Shown here: positions 1,862-42,019 of the stretch, in pieces
Position numbering within the stretch: position 1 is the stretch's first letter
Layout of the letters: each line of letters opens with the position of its first letter
Assembly (NCBI RefSeq): GCF_902459465.1
Contig: NC_047077.1
Coordinates: 12,028,001-12,092,000, forward strand
Direction: 5' to 3'
DNA: 64,000 nucleotides
Origin: Asterias rubens
Taxonomy: Eukaryota
The notes under the pieces: model-generated
The model's database searches: none
Seen by the model: the letters and a program-made list of their open reading frames with translations, nothing else
What the model was told of the DNA's origin: nothing
Position numbers and translations under genes: made by a program

Positions 1862-2524
1862 ATCTCATGAACTAAGTTTCCAAAATCCCGCAAACCAACA
1901 AGGACTGCTGCAAATAAACAATCTCTTAACCATCGCACTATCTCCCTATGGAACAATATTGCGCCAGATGTAAAAGTATTTTCCTAGAAAAGTGCATAAA
2001 AGTTATACGTCAACGGTCCAACTTGCGGGGGCTTGAGGTCAAGGTCAAGATCAACAAACAAGTGACAATAATTCAATCTGTTTCAAGGGTACCAGAGACA
2101 GACCTACAACTTCATGAAGTTTCAACGCTTCATGTGCTTTCTTTTTAAAAATTATTTTAATAATTATTACGGTAAGAATAGCCTTCGCCACTTTGTACTT
2201 GTCAGACTCGACAATATAGAAATCGTGTTAATGAAAGACGGACACAAAATAATAGTCACTTGACACGAAATAAACTTCAGATATTCTTATTAAATATATC
2301 TAAGGGGTATTTACAAAATTTGCAACATAATCAAGGTATAAACTGAATGGCTTCCGGACGTTTGGGTCGCCAGTAACTATTGGTTGTATATCTCCCAATT
2401 TCAAATAAACTTATAAAATATGATACGCTTTACGGAATGGTTCTTGTGCTCCTTCTCACATCAAGGTATAAATATCGCACAACAGTCACAATAAATAAAT
2501 CAATGTATATCGTCTCTATTTGTG
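1862..2524 (+). repeat. ~660 bp direct duplication, copy 1
   Basis: Near-identical to 3618-4279 (offset ~1755), with only a few substitutions seen by eye. Confidence 0.95.
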
Positions 2525-2680
2525 GTTGACATCTCAGGTGTTTTAATGTTTTAATATTGACTAGCTTGGTGATGGTGCTGATGATCATGCAGGGAGCCGT
2601 CCCAAGTTCCGCTGAACGTCTCTGCACCTGCAAGGGGGGGGGGTTGGAGACACGTCGACGGGTTACTGAAGCACGCATCA
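2114..2680 (+). pseudogene. Truncated, frameshifted tectonin-lectin paralogue (exons 2114-2133 and 2565-~2680)
   Basis: ATG AAG TTT CAA CGC TTC AT|gt ... tag|C TTG GTG ATG gives the signal peptide MKFQRFILVMVLMIMQGAVPSSA, with the same phase-2 junction as the five intact genes. It continues ERLCTCK, a G10 run, then in a shifted frame WRHVDGLLKHAS (start of blade 1). Homology ends there. The donor gtgctt is weak. Confidence 0.7.
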
Positions 2681-3617
2681 AGGTCTTCAAATTTTCTAAG
2701 AAACACCTGTGCGTGCTTAGGCATCTGTCCGGCATTGGAACGAGGGAACAAAAAGAAACTCAAAATGTAGGCTAAGTTAAAAACCAGCCATATAACGACC
2801 TTGGTTGCATAGATTCTGTTTAAGGAAAAATACACGGTCAAAAGAAAAATTGATGATGTCAACTTAAAAGAAGTTCTAGTCCAACTCAAATGGTCTGGGT
2901 GCTTTTTGTAAGTTTCTCTTAAATATAACTTACTGATGTGCTATTGTTTTTGAGAAATGGGTAAAATAAAGTACGAAAACAGTTTTCGTTCCTAAAACGA
3001 CAATTATTTTAGCATGTAAAACGTATTTTCGTGGCATTGTTTTACTCGAACTTAACTGTTCACTTCACCCATTTTCATTCCATGCTCAGTTTGTGTTTTT
3101 TTTTTCTTAATTTTTTTTCTCTGCAATTTTTGTATTCCTTGCAATGCGCAGTAGAGTATATATAATAGGTCACTTCGCAATGTACATGTCCGTATTATAT
3201 TATATTTTAAGGTTAGATTTCTACTACCATTATCTTCAAATGGTGTAAGCTTAATGAACATCTTTGGACATTGCTTTTTATGTTACAAAAAGTACCCGGG
3301 ACGATTCAAATGAACCATTCCCCTTCACATGAAACGTTAACTTACCCCCACCCCCCTACCCGGGATGAACTGACTGTTCGTAGAGATACGTCACGACTGG
3401 TTACAATACAATGAAGTTCATGATTGACTCCAAACAACATTAGTCACCTGCAAGTGAAACAACTTCCTTCATCTTTAAGTCACTTCTGAAATCCCACTGT
3501 TTCACTTTCAGGAGACCTATCAATGACTTATTTATTTATTCTGTACCTCAGTACCTTTGAGCAAACCTTGCTTCAGGCGCTTTCTAAACGACGACTAAAA
3601 TTTAAACTCACACGGTT

Positions 3618-4279
3618 ATCTCATGAACTAAGTTTCCAAAATCCCGCAAACCAACAAGGACTGCTGCAAATAAACAATCTCTTAACCATCGCACTATCTC
3701 CCTATGGAACAATTTGCGCCAGATGTAAAAGTATTTTCCTAGAAAAGTGCATAAAAGTTATACGTCAACGGTCCAACTTGCGGGGGCTTGAGGTCAAGGT
3801 CAAGATCAACAAACAAGTGACAATAATTCAATCTGTTTCAAGGGTACCAGAGACAGACCTACAACTCCATGAAGTTTCAACGCTTCATGTGCTTTCTTTT
3901 TAAAAATTATTTTAATAATTATTACGGTAAGAATAGCCTTCGCCACTTTGTACTTGTCAGACTCGACAATATAGAAATCGTGTTAATGAAAGACGGACAC
4001 AAAATAATAGTCACTTGACACGAAATAAACTTCAGATATTCTTATTAATTATATCTTAGGGGTATTTACAAAATTTGCAACATAATCAAGGTATAAACTG
4101 AATGGCTTCCGGACGTTTGGGTCGCCAGTAACTATTGGTTGTATATCTCCCAATTTCAAATAAACTTATAAAATATGATACGCTTTACGGAATGGTTCTT
4201 GTGCTCCTTCTCACATCAAGGTATAAATATCGCACAACAGTCACAATAAACAAATCAATGTATATCGTCTCTCTTTGTG
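3618..4279 (+). repeat. ~660 bp direct duplication, copy 2 (carries a second copy of the ATG micro-exon at 3869-3888)
   Basis: Near-identical to 1862-2524, but not followed by a tectonin exon. Confidence 0.95.
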
Positions 4280-5993: not shown

Positions 5994-6090
5994 GGGCTAG
6001 ATAGCTCAGTTGGTAGAGCGCCGGCACGTTAAACCGGAGGTCGTTCGTTCAAATCCCGCTCTAGTCAATTTTCTTTGTTCAATCCAAAAT
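5994..6090 (+). mobile_element. tRNA-derived SINE head
   Basis: A-box tagctcagttgg and degenerate B-box gttcaaatcc, followed by a tail shared with copies at ~11214-11300 and 22148-22226. No intact cloverleaf. Confidence 0.75.
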
Positions 6091-6663: not shown

Positions 6664-7051
6664 TTAAAGACAGTTGACACTATTGGTAATTACTCAAAAT
6701 AATTATTAGCATAAAACCTTGCTTGGTGACGAGTAATGGGGAGAGGTTGATGGTATAAAACATTGTGAGAACGGCTCCCTCTGAAATGACATACTTTTCG
6801 AGAAAGAAATAATTTCCCACGAATTGATTTCGAGACCTAAGATATTGAAATTTGAGGTCTCGAAATCAACCATCTTAAACGCCCACAAGTTCGTGTTACA
6901 AGGGTGTTTTTTTTATTCATTATTATCTCGCAATTTTGACGACCAATATTGAGCTCAAATTTTCACAGGTTTGTTGTTTTATACATGTTGAGATACACCA
7001 AGTGAGAAAACTGGTCTTTGACGATTACGAATAGTGTCCTGTGTCTTTGAA
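6664..7051. mobile_element. TTAA-flanked ~380 bp MITE, family A (Kolobok-like)
   Basis: Ends ttaaagacagttgacactattggtaatt ... gattacgaatagtgtcctgtgtctttgaa. One of more than 20 full or partial copies in the window. Confidence 0.8.
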
Positions 7052-7107: not shown

Positions 7108-7939
7108 TTAATTTGTCCTTTTAACAAAGATATAGTTAGTGTTAGTTGTTCCCCAAATCGTGAGTGACAAGGAGTCCACCTGATTCAAAGCACCCGGGAT
7201 ATTCTGCCAGTCACTCCCCCTCGGGTTAGCAGCGGACACGCCCACTCTAAAATAAATCATATTCCGGTCATTGACCCCGTAGATTCTATCCGCTGAGGTG
7301 ATGTACTTCAGACCACCGTCCACTATGACCCAGTTCAACCCATCGGGATCGGAGTCTGGGTCCCCGTACGTCCCTTCCCTGTAGTAGACGGAACTGGCCG
7401 AGCTAACTCCCCAAACACCACCGCTACCTACCGAGATTTGCTTCATCAAGGTACCCCCAATCTGGCTCCAACTGTCTCCAGCCCTGTTGCATTTGGACGC
7501 TCCAATGCGATGGTAAACGACATCGGTTTCAGATATGCCCCACACGTGGCCCTTCTGACTTACGGTGACGTGTTTAAGGGAGCCTGCCACCTTAACCCAC
7601 ATTGCACCCATCGGGTGACTCCGCCCTATACCCCTACGATAGAACACGTCACGCGTGCTACTCACACCCCAAACGATGTTATTCCCCACATCGACTTGTG
7701 TTAGTCCTTGGCCATCAACTAGCATCCAGCTATCCCCTGCGTCGTTCTCGTTACCGTACGTTTTCTCCCTGTAGTGAACCTGGTTGTTTGCGCTTATGGC
7801 CCACACACCTGCCCGACCGACTGATACTAGTTTAAACCTTCCTTCCAGTTTGGAGAATGAAACCCCGGGGGTTAAACCGCCCTCTATCGGTATTGGTTGT
7901 CTAATGACAATGACCACCACGCAAGATGCCAATAAGATC
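7108..7939 (-). CDS. Secreted tectonin beta-propeller lectin 1, main coding exon (spliced protein 283 aa)
   Basis: Six W-x2-(I/V)-x-G-x-L-K-x-(I/V)-S-V-G...V-W-G-(V/I) tectonin blades. Acceptor tttag|G at 7940/7939. Spliced N-terminus MKLWYQWILLASCVVVIVIRQPIPIEG is signal-peptide-like. The joined CDS is 852 nt, a multiple of 3. Confidence 0.93.
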
Positions 7940-8365
7940 CTAAAGTGAAGACACATGGAGGCAAAAAGAAACTATGAAGTATAGCGCTCTACTAAAGGCA
8001 CATGGACACGCTTGGTATTGTCAAAGAAATGTATTCCCACTTGTTGCATCCCAACATAATGCAAAAATTAAAAAGTTGGTCTCAATAATTATTATTGTTT
8101 ATCGAGTTCGCAAGAGAAGAAAATATACCCTCGTTCCACAAGGTAGTGTGTTTTCAGTTGACTATGTAAAAGACTTTCAGCCACGGTATTTTTTTTATTT
8201 GAGTGTAAAAGTACCTCTTTCTCAAAAACAACGTTAGCTCTTCGGAGAGAGCAGTTTCTCAGTGTTCCCAGCTCCAAGTAAGTTCGTATGCTAAAAATTA
8301 GTCTGAGTAGTTACCAATAAGTACACTAGACAAACTTTCTCTAAACAGTGTGTGTTTCATTCTAT

Positions 8366-8779
8366 TTAAAGGCAGTAGACACTATTGGTAATTACTCAAA
8401 ACATTTATTAGCATAGAACCTTACTTGGAAACGAGTAATGGGGGAGGGGGGGGGGGGGTGGTTGATAGTAAAAAAAACTGTGAGAAACGGCTCCCTCTGG
8501 AGTAACATAGTTTTCTGGAAAGTACATGTTGTAATTGTCCACGAATTTGATTTCGAGGCCTTTAGAATTATATTTTGAGGTCTCGAAATCAAGCATCTAA
8601 AGGCACACAACATCATGTGACAAGGGTGTTTTTCTTTTATTATTATCTCGCAACTTCGCTGACCAATTGAGCTCAAATTTTCACAGGTTTGTTATTTTAT
8701 GCATATTATGTTGAGATACGCCAACTGTGAAGACTAGTCTTTGACAATTACCAATACATGTAGTGTGCAATGTCTTGAA
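8366..8779. mobile_element. MITE family A in the lectin 1 intron
   Basis: ttaaaggcagtagacactattggtaatt at the left end, degenerate inverted end, internal sequence as in other copies. Confidence 0.8.
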
Positions 8780-8904
8780 GAAATTTTGTGAACAAATGAA
8801 ACAACGTAAGAAAAACTAAGACGACTGTTAGTTACCGAGCGTTAAAATGACATAAACGGGAAACACGTACTAAGTACAAGTCACATTTCTCTGTGATTAT
8901 TATA

Positions 8905-9345
8905 CACCATGACTGGCAGTGATGTAACTAGTGTATGTCTATTCCCCAATAGGACTTTGAGTAACTAGAAGAGGGACCTATTTCCCGAGGCCAAATGCCG
9001 AGGGAAATAGGCCCCTTTTCTCTGGTCATCTCACAGGCCCGAGGGGGAATAGACGCACACTAGTTACCGAATTATGCCAGTCAATATGTGTTTTAAAACA
9101 TAGCTCGGTCATCTTAAATGTGAAATAACAGCAGAAATCTGGAAAAAGAGGTTTTGTAGTTGCTGTTCACGGTTAAAGTCAAGAGAGGGCGCTGTAACCG
9201 GGCACTATTTTCAAAGACTAGTGCCCGCTCGGGTACTAGTTTCCGCAAAACACGCGCGCGATCACTAGACTATAATGTTAATCCCACGTGACCGTTTTTC
9301 AGCCAACCACGATACAGAACAAGCAAGAGGTGTGTTATAATACAA
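8905..9345. repeat. Dispersed repeat family C (also ~30200-30770; fragments ~34195-34290 and ~34690-34850)
   Basis: Shared collinear blocks such as ccgaattatgccagtc, ctgttcacgg..gtcaagaga and cgtgaccgt.tttcagccaacca. Confidence 0.65.
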
Positions 9346-9441
9346 GATATCTTATAAATGACTATTGTTTCACAATATTATACGGTTATTCCTTGTCCCT
9401 CATTGTCCTTTTTAGCTTCCGTATAACCTGTTTTAACTTAC

Positions 9442-9461
9442 CATTGATACCATAGCTTCAT
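9442..9461 (-). CDS. Lectin 1 start-codon micro-exon (MKLWYQ+TG)
   Basis: ctctcag|GATTTTAAGT ATG AAG CTA TGG TAT CAA TG|gtaagt. Exon 9442-9471; phase 2 matches the acceptor at 7939. Confidence 0.85.
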
Positions 9462-11062
9462 ACTTAAAATCCTGAGAGAACAGAAATCACCAGCTGTTGC
9501 AAACTGCTCTTACCAGCAACACAAAAGACCTGTGGAATAATGAAAAAAAACACGTGATTTTCAGAATAAGCAAACATTAGCTAAAAACCAATAATAAGCA
9601 TTTTATAACTGACGTACAGATCCTTGTCATTTGATTGGTGGAACTTACTTCACGTGACATTCACTATTACTCCCAGCGCACCGGCGATCAAAAAGACCTA
9701 TTTGCCCATGGAGAATAGTATTTCCCATTCAACAGTTAGGTTCATCCTTGTTCCCAATGTTTTGAGCAGTACAGCGCCGCCGCGCTGCTGCTAAAACAAA
9801 GGAGCACCTGTGCAAAAGGTTGTGATCCGATTTGTGCACTGTTGCCGCTACGCGGCGCTATGTGATTCTTTGGCTGTCAGTAATTTGTGTGATTTTTCAT
9901 AATGTTATACTTTAAAAATACATGGAATGACAAGGATCTATTAAATGTCAGTTAAATAAAACAAATATTGAGTGGCTTTAATTCGTGGAATGGAAGGAAT
10001 ATTATCGCTCGGTAAAATTTGGGCTGTTCCATTTCACTCGGCTTAGCCTCGTGAAATGCAACAGTCCAAGTTTTACCTTGCGATAATAATCCTCCCATTC
10101 CACTCTGAGCCACTCAATATTTGTATAATAATATGCAACACACGTAAATTTGGTTAGTAATCTTGTTTTTATCAAAGGAAGACATTTCCTGCTTAGCAAA
10201 TTTCGACCCTAAAGTAGAGTCTGCCTCGAAGGATACTCTCAATTGAAACCTTCTGATGAGTGACATCAAAAGTAAACTTTTGTAATCTTGAAATCAACGG
10301 GTTCAAAGGTAATTGAAACACTACACGGACGTTGAAGCCACATTATTTATTGGGCTTAAAAAGACAGCTATCGTCCAATATTTTGCCTCCATTGTGTTCA
10401 TTGAGGGCGCTTTTTATGCCTCATGGACCTTTTTTGCAAAATACTTATTGAGAAGTGCTGACTGTTGAATGGGGTGCATGCTTGTCTATGTTTGCCATCA
10501 AACTTGTTTCCTTCCTTGTTAAAACTAAAGCTTCTCTTGTCTTATCTCCACATGGTGGTTCTTGATTAGGTACAACGATTGAGTTTACTTTTCTAATGTA
10601 AATCTGTGGACATTTCGAAAAAAGAACCCGAATCCTTTTAAGGAATCATGTGGCATTGCGGCCGTTTCCATAGTCTGAGGAATTCAAATGTAATTGGTAA
10701 CTTGTGACTAAGCAAGTCATTGTATAGTACCAAACAATTCAAATCTAACAGGAATCATCATTATTATTTGATAAAAACTCACGTTTGGCGATCGGATGTC
10801 TGCAATGCTTGGCGTGTCGTGTGCTGCGCTCTCTGCTCCAGGCGGTGCGAATCTGCTCTAACTCTCGCATCATTCCATCTTCGAAACCGACTGTCACACT
10901 CCTGTGACGTCATCGTCAGTACGTCACGGGTCACGTGTGTCTTAGTCTCGAGTAGTGACGATCATTTTTTTAAACGTAGTCGCCGATATAGCACTAGAAT
11001 TACTGGAGAAGATTTGTATCACACAAACATACTGGATCAAAACCAAAGCCGTATCTGAAACT

Positions 11063-12119: not shown

Positions 12120-12509
12120 TTAAAGGCAGTGGACACTATTGGTAATTGTCAAAGACTAGCCTTTACAGTTGGTGTATGTATCTCAACATATGCATAAAAT
12201 AACAAACCTGTGAAAATTTGAGCTCAATCGGTCATCAAAGTTGTGATATAATAATGAAAGAAAAATAACCCTTGTCACACGAAGTTGTGTGCGTTTAGAT
12301 GATTGATTTCGAGACCTCAATTTCTAAATCTGAGGTCTCGAAATCAAATTCGTGGAAACATACTTCTTTCTCGAAAACTACATTACTTTAGACGGAGTCG
12401 TTTCTCACAATGTTTTATACCATCAACCTCTCCCCATTACTTGTTACCGGGAAAGGTTTTATGCCAATAATTATTTTGAGTAATTACCAATAGTGTCCAC
12501 TGCCTTTAA
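12120..12509. mobile_element. MITE family A, full length
   Basis: ttaaaggcagtggacactattggtaatt ... aattaccaatagtgtccactgcctttaa: perfect TIRs with TTAA at both ends. Confidence 0.9.
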
Positions 12510-12588
12510 ACTTTGAAAGTCTCTACATGATTCTATATATTGATAAATTCCTCAAAAATGTGACTCCTTCAAATTATTGTGTCAATTG

Positions 12589-14641: not shown

Positions 14642-14658
14642 ATGATGAAATTCATTTG
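14642..14658 (+). CDS. Lectin 2 start-codon micro-exon (MMKFI+TG)
   Basis: caaaATG ATG AAA TTC ATT TG|gtaagg; phase 2 joins the acceptor tacag|T at 15266. Confidence 0.85.
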
Positions 14659-15265
14659 GTAAGGTATTTTTTAAAGGCATAGAGACAATTCGTTTTTTAT
14701 TTTAAAAACCAATGTTAGCTTAAACACCTGGTTACTTTAAATATCTGTTAGTATAAACATTTACTTTGTGACGAGCAATGGAGACAATTTTTATGTGAAT
14801 AGTAAACATTGTGAGATACGGATCCCTCCGAAGTAACCTAGTTTTAGAAAAAGGGGTTATTTCTCACTCTGACAATAACAGACTTCATGCCTGCAGCCTT
14901 TTTAGGTTTCTGAAAGAAAGTGCACAAATTAATTCGTGCGGCATGGGTAGTTGTGTCTAATTCTCTTCCAACTTTGAAGTCCAATTATTTCATACTTTTC
15001 ACTTATGTTTGGATATACACCAAGTGAGAATACTGGTCTTTGACAATACAGCATTATTATATCAAGTTCCGTTTAATAAAAATAAGCACCACAAGTCACA
15101 CTTACCTTTTTTCGAGGCAGCATGTGGGTGAACAAACTCTATAATTTTGAACGTGCTAACACAGTTTACAGTGCTTCACAAATCGGTTGAACTTAACCAA
15201 ATTAACTATAAAAACGACACCTTTTATTATTGAGTCGTTTAATTATACCCTTTTTCCAATTACAG

Positions 15266-16055
15266 TTTGGTGTTGCTCCTATGCACTGCGCAGTCCACTT
15301 TGGGGGCGTGGCAGAAAATCGACGGGGGTCTGAAACACGTCTCAGTCGGCCGAGCTGGTGTATGGGGCGTCAACAACAATGACAACATCTACTACCGCAG
15401 AGATACATACGGAGACAATGAAAACCCGGGAACAACCTGGACTCAAATCGCAGGAGGACTGAAACAAGTCGATGTTGGTGACGACATGGTCTGGGGTGTC
15501 AACTCCAATGATGATATCTTCTATCGATCTGACATCAATGAAGGCGATCAAGACGGGGCTGAATGGGTCAAAATTGATGGAAAATTGAAGCATATTAGTG
15601 TCAGCCAAAAGGGGCATGTTTGGGGGGTGAACTCCGGTGATAAGATCTATCACCGTATCGGGGTTAGTGGTTGCAGCAAAGCAGGCTCAAGCTGGAAACT
15701 GATCGCGGGTGGGTTGAAGCAAATTTCAGTTGGTAGCTCGGGTGTTTGGGGAGTCAACTCCGGTGATCAAATCTTCTACCGTCAGGGGACCTTCGGGGAC
15801 CCGGTCGAAGACACCGATGGGTCCGGCTGGACCAATGTGGCTGGCGGTCTCAAGTACATCAGCTCCGCTGAAGTGGTGTATGGTGTCAATGCAGGGGATT
15901 CGATCTACTACCGTGCAGGTGTCTGTGAGGAAACCCCAGTGGGTACATCTTGGGTGCAGATTGCTGGAGGGCTGAAACAGATTGAGTCACTATCACCTGT
16001 TGTCTGGGGCGTCAACTCAAACGCTAATATCTACACAAAAGAAGATGATGCTTAA
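15266..16055 (+). CDS. Secreted tectonin beta-propeller lectin 2, main coding exon (spliced protein 268 aa)
   Basis: Six near-consensus blades (WxQIxGGLKQISVG..GVWGVNSxDxIYYR). Signal peptide MMKFICLVLLLCTAQSTLG. Joined CDS 807 nt. AATAAA at 16120-16125. Confidence 0.95.
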
Positions 16056-23496: not shown

Positions 23497-23513
23497 ATGA
23501 TGACATTGACGTG
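23497..23513 (+). CDS. Lectin 3 start-codon micro-exon (MMTLT+TG)
   Basis: ctaac..ctctccgcag| exon 23437-23513 ending ATG ATG ACA TTG ACG TG|gtatga; phase 2 joins ttaaag|G at 24528. Confidence 0.8.
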
Positions 23514-24527
23514 GTATGATGCATCTCTTGGCTTTCTCAACTTGTTGTCTCTTCTTTCGGGGGTATCATAGCCGAGTGTCACAGCTACTCGAGCGGAATG
23601 TTTTTAACGGGATTCCATTTTAACTTGTTTATAAGGCGTTTGTTTACAATTTAAATGTAATTTTGTTATGTGTACACTTCTGATTTTGTGTAAGTGTCGA
23701 CAAAAAAAAATAGGATTCAACCTCTAGGTTATACAAAACTAAAAACACTTTTGCCGGGGACGACACGCGTCAAAATGACAATGCTTCGACGTCATACTTG
23801 GGAGTTTGCTATGTATACCTCCATGCTGTAAACAAAGCAGCTATACAAACCGGAGCTTCTAACTTTAATGTAACATGAACAATTACGTAACAGAGCTGGA
23901 TAAGAGTATTCGAAATGATTGTCTATTTATAGGCATAGACTCGATTTCCTTATTGATTAAAAGCATTTTTGATGAAATTCGACAAAGTTGTTCAAACTTG
24001 AACTTTTTCGTTCAAGTAGGTCTCTTAAAGCATCGAGTTCAGTTTCTGGTGGCGAAGTCATCAGGATTCGGGGTCTGGGTTCGAATCCTGGTCATGATAC
24101 TTGTGTGTTTGAGCATTACACTATTTCTTTATATATCTTTTGGAGATACACACAAACAAACAGTGGATTATCTATAGACGATGTGACCTATGTTTACATT
24201 CAAACCGCCCTCTGGTGAAAAAACACTATATACGTCATGTTTCGCCGGGCAAAGAGTTGCGTAGTCATAGTAAGATTGCGTACACTTTCTAGCTGGCTGC
24301 CAAAACACAAAGGTTTTGCCCGGCGGTATGCGCGCGAATCATGTTATGGTTTTTTGTGTGACGTCAGAGGTCACATCGTCTATAATGAGGACAATGATCG
24401 ACAATTATGGCTTGTGACCTAAGAAAATTGGTCCCTCCATGTCGCAACTCTCTCCATACACAGCTCTGAATATTTTGAATGTTGCTAACGTTTTTGGTAT
24501 GTCTTTGTTTGATACGATTTTTTAAAG

Positions 24528-25386
24528 GTTTGTTGGGATCGTCTGTATCCTGATAGGTGGTATGCAAAGCACCGGAGAAGCTAACTCCCTAGTACACAAT
24601 CGGGTCAGAAGACACGGGCATCATCACTTTCATAACAAGGACCCGTGGAGTGGCCTCGAAGGGTCCTTGAAGCACGTATCGGTCGGTCTGGCAGGAGTGT
24701 GGGGTGTCAACTGTAAGGACCAAATCTACTATAGAGAAGACACGTACGAAGACGAGGTGTTAGGCAGTGATTGGGTTGAGATTGAAGGGAAACTTGTTCA
24801 AGTCGATGTTGGGGATGATGTTGTATGGGGTGTGAACAGTTGTCAAAACATTTACTATCGGGAGGGTATCTTGGGACGGAACCCCACGGGTAATGATTGG
24901 ATCCTCGTAGAGGGAAAATTGAAACACGTCAGCGTCAGTCAACGTGGGCATGTTTGGGGCGTTAACAAACACGATGATATCTACCATCGAATTGGGGCCA
25001 GCTTTTGGAATCCTGGCGGGGACAGCTGGAACAAAATTTGCGGTAAATTGAAGCAAATCTCAGTTGGTGAGGCGGGGGTGTGGGGCGTTAACTCAGCCCA
25101 TAACATATACTATAGGGATGGGACTTTTGGAGATCCAGAGTCGGACCCAAACGGTACTGGCTGGACACAAGTAGGCGGTCAGCTGAATTACATTAGCTCA
25201 GCTGAGAATGTGTACGGAGTGAACTGTAACGGTTGTGTGTTCAAACGTGTAGGCCGGTGTTCTACCAACCCAGTTGGTACAACATGGGAATCTCACCAGG
25301 GATCCCTGAAACAGATTGAATCCTTTTCATTAATGGTGTGGGGAACCAACAAGCATAACAATGTTTACGAGAAGGATCAAGAATGA
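24528..25386 (+). CDS. Secreted tectonin beta-propeller lectin 3, main coding exon (spliced protein 291 aa)
   Basis: Six tectonin blades. The open frame upstream of the ORF-track ATG encodes FVGIVCILIGG, the signal h-region, after branch site gctaac and acceptor aag|G. Joined CDS 876 nt. AATAAA at 25729-25734. Confidence 0.93.
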
Positions 25387-25398
25387 GGAGGGAGGACA

Positions 25399-25538
25399 AT
25401 GGGCTACTTTGGAACGCTAGGTGGCAGCAGATTTACCGGATAACTTTCCATTGTTTACGTACTTCTGCGTGTGCGCACGTTACTGAAAAAAAAATTACAT
25501 GGTAAGTCTGCTGCCACCTAGTGTCCTAAAGGTCTCCA
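25399..25538. mobile_element. Short MITE with CTCF-like motifs in its TIRs, just 3' of the lectin 3 stop
   Basis: cgctaggtggcagcagatttacc ... ggtaagtctgctgccacctagtg. Related copy at 38008-38142. Confidence 0.7.
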
Positions 25539-27550: not shown

Positions 27551-27933
27551 TTAAAGGCAGTGAACACTATTGGTAATTACTCAAAATAATTATCAGCATG
27601 AAACCTCACTTGCTAACGAGTAATGGGGAGAGGTTGATAGTATAAAACATTGTGAGAAACGGCTCCCTCTGAAGTCACGTAGCTTTCGAGAATTTAATTT
27701 TCCACGAATTTAATTTCGAGACCTCAAGTTTAGAATTTAAGGTCTCGAAATCAAGCATCTGAAAGCACACAACTTCGTGTGACAAGGGTGTTTTTTCTTT
27801 CATAGTTATCTCGCAACTCCGACAACCAATCAAGCTCAAATTTTCACAGGTTTGTTATTTTATGCATATGTTGAGATACACCAAATGACAAGACTGGTCT
27901 TTGACAATTACCAATAGTGGCCATTGTCGTTAA
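27551..27933. mobile_element. MITE family A
   Basis: ttaaaggcagtgaacactattggtaatt left end; inverted right end. Confidence 0.85.
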
Positions 27934-29218: not shown

Positions 29219-30050
29219 TTAGTCTGAATCGGTAACGTAGATGTTATCGCCTGAGTTGACGCCCCAAACAACCGAGGACAGGGACTCAATTTGCTTCAAT
29301 CTGCCGGGAAGGGACCGCCATTGGCTGCCGGTTGGGTTGGAAGCAGATATACCCTCACGAGTGTAGATAACATCAGCAGCATTGACTCCGAAGATCCCTG
29401 TCGCTGAACTGACGTATTTCAAAGCACCAGGGACTCGTTCCCAGGTTGAACCGTTAGGATCTGACGCAGGATCACCGAAGGTTCCCACACGGTAGTAAAT
29501 GCTATCACCGGAGTTGACGCCCCATACTCCCGCATCACCCACCGAGATCTGCTTCAACTTGCCTGATATTTGTTTCCAGCTTCCCTCAGGATAGCAAATA
29601 GATCCCGCGATGCGGTGGTATATATTGTCATTTGAATTGACGCCCCAGACGTGACCATTCTGGCTGACGCTGACGTGTTTCAGAGCTCCAGCCACCTGAA
29701 CCCAAGATGTACCAGTGGGGGATGCATTCGAGATGCCAGCACGATAGTAGATGTTGTCGTTGGAGTTGACGCCCCATGCAACATCCTGACCAACATCGAT
29801 CTGCTTAAGTCTCCCACCTATACTAACCCAAGTAGACCCCCGATTAGCCTCGTCGCCATATGTGCTCACTCTATAGTAGATGACGTCACCACTGTTGACA
29901 CCCCACACGCCGGCTTGACCAATTGAAACATGTTTCAAAGCCCCACCGATCTGTTGCCACGAGATTTGTGTTTCGCTGTCCCTCTTATGCACTTCTTGGT
30001 TGGAAACATGGCTACGTACACCCGTTATTATGCACAGGAGTAGCGTCAAG
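29219..30050 (-). CDS. Secreted tectonin beta-propeller lectin 4, main coding exon (spliced protein 283 aa)
   Basis: Six consensus blades. Acceptor tatgtttag|C at 30050. Signal MAVAIYCLTLLLCIITGVRS. Joined CDS 852 nt. AATAAA (minus strand) at 29135-29140. Confidence 0.95.
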
Positions 30051-30846
30051 CTAAACATAGAGATACGACAGAAAAAAGTTATTTTGTGTAGCGCCCTCTC
30101 TCGGTTTAGTTCTATAGGTTTGTTACAAAGTGGCCGATGTTGAAAATTGTTTGAATATTTGCATTGTGTAGATAAATAGGAAGAAACTATTTTAATTGCA
30201 AAAACTGACTGAAAATGGGGGTGAATACACGTCTACTCCCCCGAGGGACTTTGAATGACATGAACCAGAAATAGGTCCCCCTTACAGGCCCAACAAGGGG
30301 GGGGGGGGGTTAGACGTGCACTAATTACCGAATTATGCCAGTCCGTATGTGTTTTATATTACTCTCACTCTTAAAAGTGAAAAAGAAAACAAGCTGGAAA
30401 AGGAAGGAAGTGTTTTAGTTACTGTTCACGGATAACGTCAAGAGATGGCACTGTAAACCAGTCACGCGATCACATGACTGTATGAGGGAGGTTTAGCTGC
30501 ACGTTAGCGAGCAAAATACTTGAACGTGAACGTCAGAAAATTCTGAAACGTGAAGTATAGCATTTCTCACGTCAGGTACGTACGTGCAGACTTCATACGC
30601 AAGCATAAAATAGGCCCAATGTGGTGACGTCACATAGAAACGACAATGACATACACGATCTCGTTTTTGCTTGCGTATCGTGCAGTTTAAAACCTCCATA
30701 TTAGTTCACCCGACGTGACCGTGTTTCAGCCAACCAGAAAACAAAACAAACAAGAGCGTGTTGTAATATTTTTTTCTGGCTGCTGTTGAGTTCAGTCAAA
30801 CTTGGTATGAAGTTTCGTTTTTTTGGGGTGTGTTTCCAGGACTGGC

Positions 30847-31223
30847 TTAAAGGCACTGGACACTAGGGGTAATTACTCAAAATAATTATCAGCATAAAAC
30901 CTCACTTGGTAACGAGTTATGGGGAGAGGTTGATAGTACAAAACATTGTGAGATACGGCTCCCTCTATTAAGTGGAGTAGTTTTCGAGAAAGAAGTGACT
31001 TTCCATGAGTTTGATTTCGAGACCTCAGATTTAGAATTTGAGGTCTCGAAATCAAGCATAATATGAAAGCTCACAACTTCGTGTGACGAGGGTGTTTTTT
31101 CTTTCTTTCACAGTTATCTCGCAACTCCGACGACCAGTCGGTTTGTTATTTATGCATATGTTGAGATACACCAAGTGAGAAGACTGGTCTTTGACAATTA
31201 CCAATAGTGTCCAGTGTATTTAA
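30847..31223. mobile_element. MITE family A in the lectin 4 intron
   Basis: TTAA-bounded TIRs as in other copies. Confidence 0.8.
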
Positions 31224-31799
31224 ACAGTTATCTTTTACTAGGAGCGATGTGCTGATGTTTGAATGGTTTACTCCTTTTAATTTTAACGTATATTTTAGCT
31301 TGGCCAAAAAAGTATTTTAGAGGGAAGGTACCCGTTTGGTAATAACTCAAAACAAATATTAACTTAAAAACTGACTTGGTAATGGGCATTGGAGAGCTGT
31401 TGTTAGTATAACACATTGTGAGAAACGGCTCCCTCTGAAGTAGCATAGATCTTAAAAAAGGGGTAATTTCTCACTAAAATAATAAAAGACTTTTCTGAAA
31501 GCACACAAATTTGTCAAACAAGGGTGTTTTTTCTCTCATTATTTACTCGCAACTTCGATGACCAAATTGTAATTGTATGCTTATGATGGGATACACCAAG
31601 TGGGAAGACTGGTCTTTGACAATTACCAAACGTGTACCTTCCCTTTATGGGAAGTATTCAGATTGTCTTGGGATTCGAACCTATCGCTATTCCAATTATT
31701 CTGCGGGTAGATTATTTCAAATGTCTCTTTTTATTTTACATATATATTTACTCGTCCATTTCTGCAAAACAAAGTAAAGTAGATTTCAATGTTGCTTAC

Positions 31800-31819
31800 C
31801 AATAAATTGCGACTGCCAT
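31800..31819 (-). CDS. Lectin 4 start-codon micro-exon (MAVAIY+TG)
   Basis: cctaacag| exon 31800-31860 ending ATG GCA GTC GCA ATT TAT TG|gtaagc; phase 2. Confidence 0.85.
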
Positions 31820-34293: not shown

Positions 34294-34680
34294 TTAAGGC
34301 AGTGGACACTATTGGTAATTACTCAAAATAATTATTAGCATAAAACCTTACTCGGTGACAAGTAATGGGGAGAGGTTGATAGTATAAAACCTTGTGAGAA
34401 ACGGCTCCCTCTGAAGTTACATAGTTTTCAAGAAATAAGTAAATTTTCCACGAATTTGATTTCGAGACCTCAGATTTATTTTTTGAGGTCTCGAAATCAA
34501 GCATCAGAAAGCACACAACTTCGTACGACAAGGTTTTTTTTCCCTTTCATTATTATCTCGCAAGTTCGACGACCGATTGAGCTCAAATTTTCACAGGTTT
34601 GTTATTTTATGCATATGTTGAGATACACCAAGTGAGAAGACTTGTCTTTGACAATTACCAATAGCGTCCAGGGTCTTTAA
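34294..34680. mobile_element. MITE family A
   Basis: TTAA-bounded TIRs and family internal sequence. Confidence 0.85.
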
Positions 34681-37055: not shown

Positions 37056-37431
37056 TTAAATACAGTGGACACTATTGGTAATTGTCAAAGACCAGTCTTC
37101 TCACTTCTCAATATGCATAAAATAACAAACCTGTGAAAATTTGAGCTCAATTGGTCGTCGAGGTTGCGAGATAATAATGAAAGAAAAAACACACTTGTCA
37201 ACCAGGTTGTGTGCGTTTAGATGGTTGATTTCGAGATCTCAAATTCTAAATCTAAGGTCTTGAAATCGAATTCGTGGAAAAATTACTTCCTTCTCGAAAA
37301 CTATGTCACTTCCGAGGGAGCTGTTTCTCACAATGTTTTATACCACAACCTCTCCCCATTACTCGTCACCAATTAAGGTTTTATGCTAATAATTATTTTG
37401 AGTAATTACCAATAGTGTCCACTGCCTTTAA
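37056..37431. mobile_element. MITE family A
   Basis: TTAA-bounded TIRs and family internal sequence. Confidence 0.85.
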
Positions 37432-38007
37432 AGCACATAGCTCCCAGGTTGTGATGCATTGTTGTTATTAAACAGTCTATTGACTGCATGACCAAATCAA
37501 AAAATTTGAGGGCCTACAACCTAAAGTATGATAATAATAAGCTTGGCGCATGAATTTTTGTCTAGTGTGGTGCACCCTGCAACAACGAGAGCAGTACACT
37601 ATCCACTATCGACGAAAGACGTCTTGGGACAAGACTAGCGAGTCTGTGCGTCACCTATCCAACTTTTGTTGGCCACCCGGAAAAAAAATGTAGAGAAAGA
37701 AATTGGCAAAATAGTCAGCAGATGTACGATTATAAATTACTCTTTATTTTAGGAACTGTTACATTTTGTTGTATTTCTTAATTGCATAACATTATTTCAA
37801 GATTTGTTTTAGTTAACTTTTCATTACATCTTTGGCGTTGCATATCACTGATTTAAACACAATTCGATTCTTATCCTGTTAGAAAACAATTCATTGACAC
37901 TCGCTTTATATTATTGTTATTATTTCAATCAAATTCCCGCATTTGTATTGTTCAAGTTTGTTCTTCTTTAAGAAGTTTGGAAATAAATGTGCGTTTGAAT
38001 GAAGTGA

Positions 38008-38142
38008 ATGGGGGACTGTTTTTGGACTGAAAGTGGCAGCAGACTTACCGGGTACAACTCATAGTTCTTGGTAAATTGTGAACATGCTCAGATCAGCGTA
38101 AACAATGGAAAGTCTGCTGCTACCTGGCGTTCAAAAGTCCCA
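38008..38142. mobile_element. Short MITE related to 25399-25538
   Basis: gtggcagcagacttacc ... agtctgctgctacctggcg. Confidence 0.65.
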
Positions 38143-38632: not shown

Positions 38633-39533
38633 CTAATCCGTCTCCTTCACATAAATGTTACCGTTAGTATTGACACCCCAGACGGCAAGTGACAGTGACT
38701 CGATCTGTGACAGTCCCCCTGGAATATTCTGCCAGCCAGTACCCTTCGGTGCCGCAGCAGACACCCCCAGCCTATAATAAATATTGTTGTTAGAATTCAC
38801 CCCATAGATATCGTCGCCTGAGCTGATGTACTTCAAAGCTCCGGATACACGGGTCCAGGTGGAACCGTCAGGATCCGAATCCGGATCGCCGAAAGTCCCC
38901 TCCCTGTAGTAGATGTTATCTGCGGAGTTAACGCCCCATACTCCCCCGCTACCCACCGAAATCTGCTTCAATCCGCCCCCGATCTGACGCCAGTCATTGC
39001 CCAGAACATTACAGTTGCTGGCCCCAAGACGATGGTAAATATTATCGCCTGAGTTTACACCCCAAACATGCCCCTTCTGGCTAACGCTGACGTGCTTCAA
39101 AGCACCACCGACTTGACTCCATCCGGTACCGGTTGGGTTACCAGACGTTATGCCCTGTCGAGCATAGATATTATCGTTACTGTTCACACCCCAGACTACG
39201 TTTTTACCAACATCGAGTTGTGACAGTCCTCCACTGACTTGTATCCAAGAGGCGCCTGTGTTTTGTTCGTTGCCATACGACCCTTCCCTGAAGTAGATAT
39301 TACCGTTTGAGTTAGCTCCCCAAACACCAGACGAGCCGATGGATACGTGGATGAGACCCCCTGGGATGTTCTGCCAACCTAGTCTGGCACACGGACAGAG
39401 TTGCACCGCCTCGTAAGACTTCTCTTCATCTATAACTGTCTCTGCCATGTCGGTGGGGCTTGGGTTTCTTGGTTCGAACCATTTGTCGGGCTGGCTGAAC
39501 ACAATTGGCGTGATCAGCAGCATCAAAACCAAA
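38633..39533 (-). CDS. Secreted tectonin beta-propeller lectin 5, main coding exon (spliced protein 306 aa)
   Basis: Six consensus blades. Acceptor ctaac..ttttttcattcag|T at 39533. Signal MAYKAICLVLMLLITPIVFS. Joined CDS 921 nt. Confidence 0.95.
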
Positions 39534-39669
39534 CTGAATGAAAAAACAGTTAGTTACTATTGTTTATATCATTATATACTAGTTCATCTAGAATAACAGA
39601 TGCATAGGGTTTATTAATTTTATTTCTTAGTTGTTCCTATATACACCAATGTGTGTTATAGGTTAGTAC

Positions 39670-39900
39670 TGTATACTCAGTACTTATTGAGCTCTGTGAA
39701 AAAAATCACGGGATTCGAACACACGACCTTTGAAAGTCGAACTGCCTCTAGCTACCGGGCATTCTCGGTGGACTAGACGGGAATACACTGGTCTAATCAC
39801 GGGTCGTGGGTTCGAATCCCACCCGACTATACTTATACGCACGTCATTATTTTCCCGACAGAGATCGGGCAAGTACTGAAGTATACAGTGCTAAACACAA
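39670..39900. mobile_element. Head-to-head tRNA-derived SINE pair in the lectin 5 intron
   Basis: ggattcgaac at ~39711 (minus B-box) and ggttcgaatccc at ~39809 (plus B-box), with mirrored aagtactga(a)gtatac tails. Confidence 0.6.
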
Positions 39901-40025
39901 ATCGGTCACAGGTAAAACCAACTAGTAATGTTCTTCACTCCCGATGCAAATCTATCTTATTAAAAAGTACATTTTGCTAACATTTGCTTAACCAAATATT
40001 AGGCCCAGAGAGGAGTTGCAAAGAT

Positions 40026-40410
40026 TTAAAGACAGTGGACATTATTGGTAATTGTCAAAGACTAGTATTCACAGTTGGTGTATCTCAACATATGCATAAA
40101 ATAACAAACCTGTGAAAATTTGAGCTCAATCGGTCGTCGAAGTTGCGAGATAACTATGAAAGAAAAACACCCTTGTCACACAAAGTTGTGTGCTTTCAGA
40201 TGCTTGACTTCGAGACCTCAAATTCTAAACTTGAGGTCTCGAAATCAAATTCTTAGAAAATTACTTATTTCTCGAAAACTATGTCACTTCCGAGAAAGCC
40301 GTTTATCACAAGGTTTTATACTATCAACCTCTCCCCATTACTCGTTACCAAGTGAGGTTGTATGCTGATAATTATTTTGAGTAATTTCCAATAGTGTCCA
40401 CTGCCTTTAA
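40026..40410. mobile_element. MITE family A in the lectin 5 intron
   Basis: TTAA-bounded TIRs. Confidence 0.85.
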
Positions 40411-41004
40411 AGGTGTTTTGTGAATCCATATCACACTCTAAGCATTACTCTCAATATTAGCAAACAAACTTACTTTATAGTAACATGCACTGGCGAGCTG
40501 TTGATAGTATAAAACGTAGTTTGTTTTAGAAATAGGTAATTTTTCACTCACATTATTACAAAACTTAAGGCCTGAAGCCGGTTTTTAAGGCATCTGAAAG
40601 CGCACAATCATTGCAACAAGAGTGTTTTTTCTTTCCACTATTTTCTGGCAGCCTCGGTTACCAATTGAGTCAACATTGTCACAGATTTGCTATTTTATGC
40701 ATTTGGGGACAAAGGAGATTACTGGGTGCGTTTTTGGCGGTCATAACCAATTACTGTTTCGGTTAAATTTGCCATTGGTATAACCAATGGCCAGTGACCG
40801 AAACAATGATTGGTTACGACCGCCAAAAGGCACCCCAGGTCTTTGACAATAACTTTAGGTGTTCTGGGGTGGATTTCATAACGAGTTATGACTAATCTTA
40901 TCTCGAGTATAGGACGAGTTAGTTGCCCTAAGATACGGCTAGTCCTAACACTTTGTGAAATCGACCCCAGTGACTTTAAGATTGTGATTTCTTCTTCGAC
41001 TCAC

Positions 41005-41024
41005 CAGATAGCTTTATACGCCAT
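41005..41024 (-). CDS. Lectin 5 start-codon micro-exon (MAYKAI+TG)
   Basis: ttttttgaacag| exon 41005-41070 ending ATG GCG TAT AAA GCT ATC TG|gtgagt; phase 2. Confidence 0.85.
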
Positions 41025-42019
41025 GTTAAAGCCAGACGCAACGGAGATACAACTTGAAGCAAAACGATTCCTGTTCAAAAAATAAAAACAAACAAACAAA
41101 CGATCTCAATGCAATTAATCATTAATCCACATTGGTAATTACTCAAAATAGTTACTCAAATTTGCACAAAAACTTACTTGGCAACGAGTAATGGGGAGCT
41201 GTTGATAGTATAAAAAACTGTGAGAAACGGCTCCCTCTGAAGTGGAGTAGTTTTCGAGAAAAAAGAAATTTTCCACGAATTTGATCATTCGTCACCTCGG
41301 AACTAGATTTTGAGGTCTTGAAACAAGCATCTGAAAGCACACAACTGAAAGCTGCAAATAGTAGGCCGCGAGTGATCAGTGCAAGAAAGTGTTTACACGG
41401 AAGTTAGTGCACAACGTGGGATCAGAACACGCCAATTTCAATTTTCTTTTCACAAAATATTAACACCAAAGGAGAAAATTCAACAATTTTAAATAATGTG
41501 AACTCGGAGTTCCAACTACAAGGAACATGTGAGTAAAAAGTTCAGACTCCCGAGTTAGGTAGAAATAATTTTAACAGATTTGTGATTTTTTTTCGCAATG
41601 GTACGGGACCTTTATACCCTGGACTCCGTCGCGTTGCCTGCAACGGAGGAGTCCAACCTGGGCTAGCGCACCCCCTGCTACCGCTTCCCAGTTTGTATCG
41701 TAAACTTAGGTGTGATCTCTTGCTGAACATTGGTTACAGATTGAATGAATTCTTCCCTTGAGGTCCCCGTGCAATGGCCGCCATCTTTTACGAAACGTGT
41801 GCGCGTGAAAGGCTATTGACCTACTTTAGGCTGGAGACCGTCAGAGCCAAAATAGTACAAAGTGACAAAATGGATACTTACTCGTTGATGGTTGGATTCG
41901 GACTACCGCCAGCAGGGCTGCACAGGCTGCCCGCCAACGGTCAAGCCCTAGTGGTTTATTACGTAACTGTTCTATTCACTACATTTAGATTCTTTTCTAG
42001 AGTTATGTATGGAAACAAT

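What the first reader, a model, noticed from the sequence alone, without database searches (positions are those of the whole stretch)
2114..41070. Cluster of six secreted tectonin lectin paralogues: conserved propeller, swapped N-terminal modules
Seen: five intact genes (- + + - -) and one broken copy within ~40 kb. Each has a signal peptide and, when intact, six tectonin blades. The region between signal peptide and blade 1 differs: a few residues (lectin 1), none (lectin 2), RVRR-HGHHHFH (lectin 3), a KR-terminated propeptide (lectin 4), a 39-aa acidic spacer with CPC (lectin 5) and CTC (pseudogene). Established: tectonins (Physarum tectonins, Limulus L-6/tachylectin-1, fish-egg lectins, Laccaria Tec2) are innate-defence lectins that bind bacterial or O-methylated glycans. 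Inference: a birth-and-death family of secreted pattern-recognition lectins whose members are diversified by processing or effector modules. The fold is known; this modular cluster is the candidate novelty.
Basis: partly seen in the sequence, partly recalled or inferred. Interest (0 to 1): 0.85.

Follow-up and report, generated by a model that had tools for sequence, protein, structure and literature searches.

The report
Starfish cluster of tectonin lectin genes
This stretch of the common starfish genome carries five neighbouring, anciently duplicated genes for secreted six-bladed sugar-binding (tectonin) proteins that are already annotated as "lectin L6-like"; their differing short N-terminal leaders are real but show no sign of being swapped modules, and the "sixth copy" is only a 150-base scrap of a neighbouring gene.

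Summary
The window is Asterias rubens LR699107.1:12028001-12092000.

**Genes.** Pfam Tectonin E-values run from 1e-46 to 1e-77, and each gene has six blades. All share one structure: a 17-20-nt coding mini-exon, a phase-2 intron, and one large exon. RefSeq already calls at least three of them "lectin L6-like".

**N-terminal leaders.** But they are 0-38 residues long. The one modelled (lectin 5) is predicted disordered, and its leader has no relative outside Asterias. They are leaders, not modules.

**Sixth copy.** It is a 150-bp fragment at 2531-2680, 96% identical to the start of exon 2 of an intact sixth gene. That gene lies 2.5 kb beyond the window's left edge. The fragment is missing at the syntenic site in A. 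amurensis.

**Age.** A. amurensis has one-to-one orthologues in the same order, with the same leaders. Synonymous divergence between paralogues is saturated, so the duplications are old.

**Expression.** Lectin 3 is shown to be spliced and transcribed. Lectin 4 was seen only in a species-coded relative's RNA runs.

**Verdict.** This is an ordinary lectin gene array of a known family. Glycan-binding function is inferred by homology only. On other DNA, the scan holds only an unchecked lectin-paralogue note 1.68 Mb away.

The parts
2531..2680 (+). 150-bp ectopic fragment of the neighbouring tectonin gene XP_033640631. It covers the intron end, the acceptor and the first ~115 nt of exon 2, which encode the end of the signal peptide, the CTC motif and the start of blade 1. 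It has one extra G in a G-run, and homology ends at 2680.
   Evidence: 96% identity over 150 bp to L001:10803-10951. Absent at the syntenic place in A. amurensis. No further tectonin similarity nearby.
1862..4279 (.). Local duplication: 1862-2524 and 3618-4279 are 99% identical. The first copy abuts the gene fragment. A. amurensis has a single copy.
7108..9461 (-). Lectin 1, 283 aa on the conserved model. Coding mini-exon 9442-9461 (MKLWYQ + TG); main exon 7108-7939. It is the most divergent copy, with blade cores VWAI, VWGI and IWGT. The RefSeq model XP_033640894 (320 aa) instead starts in an upstream exon at 10782-10913 and skips the mini-exon.
   Evidence: The A. amurensis orthologue XP_071804639 is 283 aa with the same MKLWYQW start.
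14642..16055 (+). Lectin 2, 268 aa. Mini-exon 14642-14658; main exon 15266-16055. Blade 1 follows the signal peptide directly.
   Evidence: A called gene of 268 aa lies at exactly these coordinates. A. amurensis orthologue of 268 aa.
23497..25386 (+). Lectin 3, 291 aa, = XP_033640711. Mini-exon 23497-23513; main exon 24528-25386. Leader is TGEANSLVHNRVRR-HGHHHFHNKD. Six Cys in the mature part.
   Evidence: The model translates exactly to P0122. An RNA contig in run X1 joins 23512 to 24527, with 3 mismatches in 908 nt. The leader is identical in A. amurensis.
29219..31819 (-). Lectin 4, 283 aa on the conserved model. Mini-exon 31800-31819 (MAVAIY + TG); main exon 29219-30050. The called single-exon model (279 aa) starts at the ATG at 30058. 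Leader is HVSNQEVHKR-DSETQ.
   Evidence: The exon is held at 0.31-0.36 of words in two RNA(?) runs of a species-coded relative (organism B) and at 0.00 in three runs labelled like the window's likely species.
38633..41024 (-). Lectin 5, 306 aa, = XP_033640682. Mini-exon 41005-41024; main exon 38633-39533. 38-residue acidic leader ending in CPC. Three Cys in the mature protein.
   Evidence: The model translates exactly to P0121. AF2 pLDDT 89.5, with residues 15-44 below 50. Leader found only in Asterias.

Best explanation
The region is the larger part of a tandem array of at least six genes on Asterias rubens chromosome record LR699107.1. The genes encode secreted, six-bladed tectonin beta-propeller lectins of the tachylectin-1 / lectin L6 / fish-egg-lectin type.

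The copies arose by old tandem duplications and inversions of a two-coding-exon gene: a mini-exon that starts the signal peptide, and one large exon. They have since diverged to 46-62% identity, while each is kept as a one-to-one orthologue in A. amurensis.

The segment between signal peptide and blade 1 is the least constrained part of such a protein. In each paralogue it has drifted into a different short leader, which is mostly disordered where modelled.

The 'sixth copy' is a 150-bp piece of the adjacent intact gene. It was copied, in inverted orientation, into a 2.7-kb insertion specific to A. rubens. It is not the remnant of a dead full-length gene.

Inferred mode of action, by homology only: each propeller offers several sugar pockets between its blades. 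Multivalent binding to microbial or O-methylated glycans would then agglutinate or tag targets in body fluids, mucus or eggs.
For: SHOWN
- Genome identity.
- Pfam Tectonin well above cut-off in all five.
- Six blades each.
- Confident AF2 propeller whose best matches are Tec2 5fsb, fishelectin 4ruq and lectin L6 P82151 (TM by hit 0.85-0.91, 27-37% identity).
- A common mini-exon / phase-2 intron structure. My models reproduce the RefSeq proteins of lectins 3 and 5 exactly.
- Spliced lectin 3 transcript.
- Same gene order, orientation and leaders in A. amurensis.
- Orthologue dS 0.03-0.06 with dN/dS 0.33-0.64. Paralogue dS saturated, >1.5 or incalculable.
- Every paralogue forms a 100/100 orthologue pair on a long stem.
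- Fragment anatomy and its absence in A. amurensis.
- Lectin 5 leader disordered and without relatives outside Asterias.

FROM THE LITERATURE
- Tectonins bind O-methylated glycans and act in defence (PMC5238581).
Against: - No binding, secretion or cleavage data exist for any of these proteins.
- SignalP could not be run.
- dN/dS of 0.33-0.64 is fairly high. It rests on only 8-25 non-synonymous and 5-12 synonymous changes per gene, so relaxed constraint and diversifying selection cannot be told apart.
- The leaders are conserved between the two Asterias species, but at dS ~0.04 that carries little weight either way.
- The lectin 4 exon was absent from three RNA assemblies labelled like the window's likely species.
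- None of the four RefSeq accessions searched, nor the words 'lectin L6' or 'tectonin', appear in the supplements of a coelomocyte / coelomic-epithelium proteome. The site of expression is therefore unknown.
Confidence: 0.8

Rival explanations
1. One reading: the leaders are functional add-ons that arm an otherwise similar propeller differently.
- Lectin 3 would be cut after RVRR by a furin-type convertase, exposing an H-G-H (ATCUN-like) His-rich metal-binding tip.
- Lectin 4 would be activated by cleavage after KR.
- The CPC/CTC of lectin 5 and of the neighbouring gene would make interchain disulfides.
For: - RVRR fits the R-X-[KR]-R convertase consensus and is followed by HGHHHFH. This stretch is identical in A. 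amurensis.
- Mature lectin 5 and XP_033640631 have three Cys each, and lectins 1 and 4 have one each. Odd numbers are compatible with interchain bonds.
- Valvatid and velatid relatives (Patiria, Acanthaster, Solaster) also carry Cys just before blade 1.
- Elsewhere on the same chromosome, tectonins do carry real N-terminal domains (a PAN/Apple domain, a Cys-rich region).
Against: - The leaders are 0-38 residues and match no domain model.
- The lectin 5 spacer is predicted disordered and occurs only in Asterias.
- Lectin 4's EVHKR lacks the P4 Arg of a furin site, and a KR pair is common by chance.
- Conservation between two species at dS ~0.04 proves nothing.
- No cleavage, metal-binding or oligomer data exist.
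Confidence: 0.15
2. The proteins are not primarily pattern-recognition lectins of immunity. Instead they are surface, egg or mucus proteins with an ecological role: egg defence, as for fish-egg lectin and the apple-snail perivitellin-2 lectin chain, or a waterborne or contact cue sensed by other animals, as the name 'Repellent' of the Solaster dawsoni homologue suggests.
For: - Solaster dawsoni BAL43194 'repellent' is 58% identical and falls inside the asteroid clade.
- RefSeq names several A. amurensis orthologues 'perivitellin-2 31 kDa subunit-like'.
- None of the four accessions searched appear in the coelomocyte / coelomic-epithelium proteome supplements.
- A seawater metatranscriptome run holds 30% of the words of the lectin 4 exon.
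Against: - No paper on the 'Repellent' protein was found in the library, so the name is unverified.
- PV2 needs a disulfide-linked MACPF partner. No such gene is called between the lectins or beside the array.
- Identity to PV2-31 is only 23-25%, against 36% to lectin L6.
Confidence: 0.2
3. Some copies, above all lectin 1, are on their way to losing function. On this view the array is a mixture of working genes and decaying ones.
For: - Lectin 1 has the longest branch (0.98), altered blade cores (VWAI, VWGI, IWGT), the highest divergence from its orthologue (dN 0.040) and, with lectin 2, the highest dN/dS (0.64).
- Its RefSeq model lacks an N-terminal signal peptide.
Against: - The reading frame is intact in both Asterias species, despite saturated divergence from its paralogues.
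- The conserved signal-peptide mini-exon and its splice sites are present.
- ORF-bearing contigs of 0.7-1.6 kb from other public assemblies carry it.
Confidence: 0.1

Closest known systems
Lectin L6 / tachylectin-1 of horseshoe crabs (Tachypleus tridentatus P82151)
   Same: Six-bladed tectonin propeller of ~220 residues. It is the best reviewed structural match (TM by hit 0.91, rmsd 2.1 A over 251 residues, 36% identity). It is a secreted innate-defence lectin. RefSeq names the starfish genes after it.
   Different: The starfish proteins carry variable leaders of 0-38 residues before blade 1 and different Cys patterns. No ligand or activity is known for them.
Tectonin 2 of Laccaria bicolor (PDB 5fsb/5fsc)
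   Same: Best solved-structure match by sequence (E 2.7e-32) and by fold (TM by target 0.85, 37% identity). Propeller lectin that binds O-methylated fucose and mannose.
   Different: It is a fungal protein with no Cys. It is described as a toxin against nematodes and bacteria. Whether the starfish pockets keep the methyl-binding residues was not tested.
Fish-egg lectin / fishelectin of carp (P68512, PDB 4ruq/4rus)
   Same: Same fold (TM by target 0.87). Secreted.
   Different: Only 26-27% identity. In the tree the vertebrate FELs form a distant clade.
Perivitellin-2 31 kDa subunit of Pomacea (P0C8G7, P0DQP0)
   Same: Tachylectin-like propeller with an N-terminal leader. Source of the RefSeq name of several A. 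amurensis orthologues.
   Different: 23-25% identity. PV2-31 works as the lectin chain of a two-chain toxin with a MACPF partner. No such partner gene is called in or beside this array.
'Repellent' of the sun star Solaster dawsoni (BAL43194 / H1A7C6) and the 'lectin L6-like' proteins of Patiria miniata and Acanthaster planci
   Same: Same asteroid clade, 55-58% identical to lectin 4. Signal peptide followed by a short Cys-containing leader, as in lectin 5 and its left neighbour.
   Different: In this sample they appear as one gene per species of this subtype, against six or more in Asterias. They have extra Cys in blades 1-2 and 6. The basis of the name could not be traced.

Membership tests
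Tectonin family (Pfam PF19193; tachylectin-1 / lectin L6 / fish-egg lectin type) | Match to the Tectonin domain model above the curated cut-off | tested here: met
   158-257 bits against a cut-off of 30 for all five genes
Tectonin family (Pfam PF19193; tachylectin-1 / lectin L6 / fish-egg lectin type) | Six tandem ~40-residue blades forming a beta-propeller | tested here: met
   Six VWGV-type cores spaced ~43 residues apart in each protein (blade 5 of lectin 4 reads IFGV). AF2 model with 24 strands, pLDDT 97-99 across the propeller. Fold matches to 5fsb, 4ruq and P82151.
Tectonin family (Pfam PF19193; tachylectin-1 / lectin L6 / fish-egg lectin type) | Secretion through an N-terminal signal peptide (animal members) | tested here: inconclusive
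   Hydrophobic cores within the first 20 residues, and small residues at -1/-3 in lectins 2, 4 and 5. No SignalP was available. The cleavage site of lectin 1 is unclear, and its RefSeq model starts elsewhere.
Tectonin family (Pfam PF19193; tachylectin-1 / lectin L6 / fish-egg lectin type) | Binding of carbohydrate (LPS/KDO, GlcNAc, O-methylated glycans) | not testable with these tools
   Needs glycan arrays or agglutination assays. Pocket residues were not compared.
Birth-and-death multigene family | Tandem paralogues that diverge independently, without homogenisation | tested here: met
   Paralogue dS saturated; DNA identity 66-70% only. Each paralogue pairs with its A. amurensis orthologue at 100/100 support.
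Birth-and-death multigene family | Pseudogenes or gene loss, and copy-number differences between related species | tested here: inconclusive
   There is no full pseudogene, only a 150-bp fragment. A. amurensis has one extra gene (P0129) beside the UQCC-type gene. The five in-window genes are stable one-to-one.
Proprotein-convertase-processed precursors (claimed for lectins 3 and 4) | R-X-[KR]-R motif in an accessible stretch after the signal peptide | tested here: inconclusive
   Lectin 3 has RVRR, so the motif is met. Lectin 4 has EVHKR, which is dibasic only and lacks the P4 Arg. Cleavage itself cannot be tested here.
Perivitellin-2-type two-chain lectin toxins | A MACPF partner chain joined to the lectin chain | tested here: not met
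   The called genes between and beside the lectins are only tectonins, a UQCC-type chaperone gene and one 428-aa gene with no family hit on record. The rest of the genome was not searched.

The most novel reading that the evidence does not exclude
At least one leader is a working device rather than drift. Three possibilities remain open:
- Lectin 3 is cut after RVRR to expose an H-G-H, His-rich Cu/Ni-binding tip that adds metal-dependent antimicrobial or adhesive activity to the lectin.
- The CxC of lectin 5 and its left neighbour builds covalent oligomers or heteromers.
- The family serves as an interspecific chemical cue, as the name 'Repellent' of the Solaster homologue hints.
Probability: 0.12. 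Interest if true: 0.55.

Novelty: new member of a known kind. Interest (0 to 1): 0.25.

Why it matters
As it stands, the finding adds little beyond the existing annotation. It gives a corrected description of an echinoderm lectin array: the shared mini-exon gene structure, two questionable RefSeq 5' ends, the true nature of the 'sixth copy', and the extent of the array.

It would matter more if the leaders proved functional, or if the link to the Solaster 'Repellent' proved real. Echinoderm tectonins are uncharacterised. A set of six old paralogues with one conserved scaffold would then be a convenient system for asking how propeller lectins diversify their specificity or acquire new roles.

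Tried and rejected
1. **A full sixth pseudogene.** tblastn at E<=50 and a family HMM over all stop-to-stop fragments found only the five genes. The one sub-threshold piece turned out to be the 150-bp fragment.
It is an ATG...GTAAG string with no similarity to the donor gene's exon 1.
3. **Literature.** Four searches found nothing on starfish tectonins or on 'lectin L6' in Asterias. Three searches found nothing on the Solaster 'Repellent'.
4. **Protein-level evidence.** The supplements of an A. rubens coelomocyte proteome hold none of the four accessions searched, nor 'lectin L6' or 'tectonin'.
5. **Relatives of the lectin 5 leader.** Only the A. amurensis orthologue was found.
6. **Lectin 4 transcripts.** The share of words is 0.00 in three RNA(?) assemblies labelled like the window's likely species, and 0.31-0.36 in a species-coded relative. 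Reads over its 3' end were faint.
7. **Order of the duplications relative to the split from valvatid sea stars.** The tree is an unresolved polytomy.
9. **Recent gene conversion between paralogues.** Rejected, because no DNA block exceeds ~70% identity.
Full report
**What the window is**

A locus fetched through a homologue (L001, Asterias rubens GCA_902459465.3, LR699107.1) matches window 7526-1 at 100% identity over 7526 bp. The window is therefore A. rubens LR699107.1:12028001-12092000. It has 39% G+C and no N runs. It is full of a ~390-bp interspersed repeat.

**Checking the observation**

Six-frame ORF listing, tblastn and Pfam show five intact tectonin genes with strands - + + - -.
- Pfam PF19193 Tectonin scores 158-257 bits against a cut-off of 30.
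- The genes are 46-62% identical to each other.
- Each has six ~43-residue blades with a VWGV-type core.

None of the five is a single-exon gene in the conserved model.
- In each, a splice acceptor lies just inside the signal-peptide coding part of the large ORF.
- A conserved mini-exon lies 0.6-1.8 kb upstream. It holds ATG plus 14-17 nt and ends in TG|GT.

The resulting models are:

| Gene | Length | Start (ATG) |
|---|---|---|
| Lectin 1 | 283 aa | 9461 (-) |
| Lectin 2 | 268 aa | 14642 (+) |
| Lectin 3 | 291 aa | 23497 (+) |
| Lectin 4 | 283 aa | 31819 (-) |
| Lectin 5 | 306 aa | 41024 (-) |

- The models for lectins 3 and 5 translate exactly to RefSeq XP_033640711 and XP_033640682.
- The model for lectin 2 matches a called 268-aa gene at the same coordinates.
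- Lectins 1, 3 and 5, and the neighbour outside the window, are named 'lectin L6-like' in RefSeq. Lectins 2 and 4 are called as genes.

Two existing models differ from the conserved structure.
- Lectin 4 is called as the bare 279-aa ORF.
- Lectin 1 (XP_033640894, 320 aa) starts in an exon at 10782-10913 and skips the mini-exon. This gives an N-terminus without a signal peptide.
- In both cases the A. amurensis models or sequence support the mini-exon version.

- Lectin 1: 13 residues.
- Lectin 2: none.
- Lectin 3: 26 residues containing RVRR-HGHHHFH.
- Lectin 4: 16 residues containing EVHKR.
- Lectin 5: 38 acidic residues ending in CPC.

**The 'sixth copy'**

Neither tblastn at E<=50 nor a family HMM run with --max over all stop-to-stop fragments finds another propeller.

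Comparison with the intact gene XP_033640631 (P0002) settles what is there. That gene lies 2.5-4.1 kb left of the window start on the minus strand.
- Window 2531-2680(+) is 96% identical over 150 bp to the last ~35 nt of that gene's intron plus the first ~115 nt of its exon 2.
- There is one extra G in a G-run.
- All similarity ends abruptly at 2680.
- Nothing resembling that gene's exon 1 lies at 2114.

In A. amurensis the flanks are collinear, but window 1-2677 has no counterpart. That stretch includes the fragment and an adjacent 663-bp local duplicate (1862-2524, 99% identical to 3618-4279).

The fragment is therefore part of an insertion specific to A. rubens. It is a scrap copied from the neighbouring gene, not the remnant of a full paralogue. 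I describe the break only and propose no repair.

**Extent and history of the array**

In A. rubens the array continues left with XP_033640631 and then a UQCC-type chaperone gene. To the right of lectin 5, the next called gene is an unrelated 428-aa gene from 50766.

A. amurensis (CP134968.1) has orthologues of lectins 5, 4, 3, 2 and 1 in the same order and relative orientation.
- The proteins are 92-97% identical.
- The leaders are the same: RVRRHGHHHFH and EVHKR are identical, and the lectin 5 leading 62 residues are 94% identical.
- It also has an 87%-identical orthologue of XP_033640631.
- It has one additional gene (P0129) next to the UQCC-type gene, which A. rubens lacks at that place.

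Divergence figures:
- Orthologue dS is 0.03-0.06, with dN/dS 0.33-0.64.
- These rest on small counts: 8-25 non-synonymous and 5-12 synonymous changes per gene.
- Paralogue dS is saturated.

In a maximum-likelihood tree, every paralogue forms a 100/100 pair with its orthologue on a long stem. The paralogues form an unresolved polytomy together with two other groups:
- a Solaster / Patiria / Acanthaster clade;
- the PAN-domain and Cys-rich tectonins found elsewhere on the same chromosome.

The duplications are therefore ancient. Whether they precede the split from valvatid sea stars is unresolved. Turnover is visible only at the left edge of the array.

**Fold and nearest relatives**

An AlphaFold2 model of lectin 5, built with a 53-sequence alignment, has mean pLDDT 89.5 and pTM 0.82. 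It shows 24 strands in six blades. Residues 15-44, the end of the signal peptide and most of the spacer, are below 50.

| Match | Source | Identity | TM by hit / target |
|---|---|---|---|
| Laccaria Tec2 (5fsb) | PDB | 37% | 0.85 |
| Carp fishelectin (4ruq_B) | PDB | 27% | 0.87 |
| Tachypleus lectin L6 (P82151) | reviewed proteins | 36% | 0.91 |
| Pomacea perivitellin-2 31-kDa subunits | reviewed proteins | 23-25% | 0.73-0.74 |
| Physarum tectonins | reviewed proteins | 31-32% | 0.55-0.87 |
| Carp FEL (P68512) | reviewed proteins | 27% | 0.85 |

Tectonins are reported to bind O-methylated glycans and to act in defence (PMC5238581).

**Are the leaders modules?**

The evidence says no, in the sense of swapped domains.
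- They are 0-38 residues long.
- The lectin 5 spacer is predicted disordered.
- A search restricted to residues 1-62 of lectin 5, against 5.8 billion proteins, finds only the A. amurensis orthologue.
- Their conservation between two species at dS ~0.04 is uninformative.

Real N-terminal domains do occur in other members of the family (a PAN/Apple domain, a Cys-rich region). N-terminal additions are thus a family theme, but not what is seen here.

Some features remain worth a bench test.
- RVRR followed by HGH in lectin 3.
- The odd number of Cys in mature lectins 1, 4 and 5 and in the left neighbour.
- Cys just before blade 1 in the valvatid and velatid relatives.

**Expression**

- In run X1, a 1117-nt contig lies on 23450-23512 and 24527-25434 with 0 and 3 mismatches. 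Lectin 3 is therefore transcribed and spliced as modelled. Further contigs cover ~0.7 kb of 3' UTR.
- Over the 3' end of lectin 4, only faint reads were seen, in one run of a species-coded relative.
- The lectin 4 exon is held at 0.31-0.36 of words in two RNA(?) runs of that relative and in one seawater metatranscriptome. It is held at 0.00 in three RNA(?) assemblies labelled like the window's likely species.
- ORFs of lectins 1 and 3 occur on short contigs of other public assemblies.
- A coelomocyte proteome's supplements hold none of the four accessions searched.
- Tissue of expression is unknown, because run metadata are coded.

**Comparison with what is known, and verdict**

The proteins meet the sequence and fold criteria of the tectonin / lectin L6 family. 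Secretion is likely. Sugar binding is untested.

They do not fit a PV2-type two-chain toxin, because no partner gene is called in or beside the array.

A 58%-identical Solaster dawsoni entry is named 'Repellent'. I could find no paper behind that name, so it stays a lead for an ecological role.

Tandem arrays of old lectin paralogues are common in invertebrate genomes, and the genes are already annotated. This is therefore a new, uncharacterised member set of a known kind. I score interest 0.25.

The scan's index holds only this window's own first-reader notes and one unchecked note on lectin paralogues 1.68 Mb away.

Noticed in passing
window 6664-7048, 8365-8756, 12120-12510, 27551-27933, 30847-31224, 34293-34680, 37056-37433, 40025-40411, 43795-44176, 48129-48517, 59556-59943, 62045-62375 and others: A ~390-bp interspersed repeat, 80-90% identical between copies, flanks or lies between nearly all the lectin genes. 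It draws very high depth in all four runs laid. Its family was not identified. It could have mediated the inversions in the array.
   Followed up: partly
window 5995-6067 (+): ARAGORN calls a tRNA-Asn (GTT) between the gene fragment and lectin 1. Whether it is a real tRNA gene or the head of a tRNA-derived repeat was not checked.
   Followed up: no
window 10782-10913 (-) and 9442-9461 (-): The RefSeq model of lectin 1 (XP_033640894, 320 aa) starts in an upstream exon and skips the conserved 30-nt mini-exon that carries the MKLWYQW start. That predicts a protein without an N-terminal signal peptide. It is either an annotation artefact or an alternative isoform.
   Followed up: partly
window 30058 versus 31800-31819 (-): Lectin 4 is called as a single-exon 279-aa ORF. 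However, a MAVAIY mini-exon with a GTAAG donor, identical to that of A. amurensis, lies 1.75 kb upstream, and an acceptor lies at 30051. No splice evidence from the window's own species was obtained.
   Followed up: partly
A. amurensis CP134968.1, between L006 (ends 12540657) and L007 (starts 12594240): L006 is collinear with A. rubens up to ~0.7 kb before XP_033640631. Yet the 87%-identical A. amurensis orthologue lies ~52 kb further on. The gap may hold an insertion or further tectonin copies.
   Followed up: no
run X15 (seawater metatranscriptome), against window 29219-30050: An environmental RNA run holds 30% of the sampled words of the lectin 4 exon. This could be sea-star larvae or shed material in seawater.
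   Followed up: no
window 50766-63854 (-): The next called gene to the right of the array encodes a 428-aa product with no family hit on record. Another first-reader note describes it as a SEA-domain membrane protein.
   Followed up: no
A. rubens LR699107.1, ~12.50 Mb (L008) and elsewhere on the chromosome: Further tectonin genes lie on the same chromosome outside the array: XP_033640902 (211 aa, apparently missing blades), XP_033640159 (PAN/Apple domain + propeller) and XP_033640591 (Cys-rich N-terminus + propeller).
   Followed up: partly
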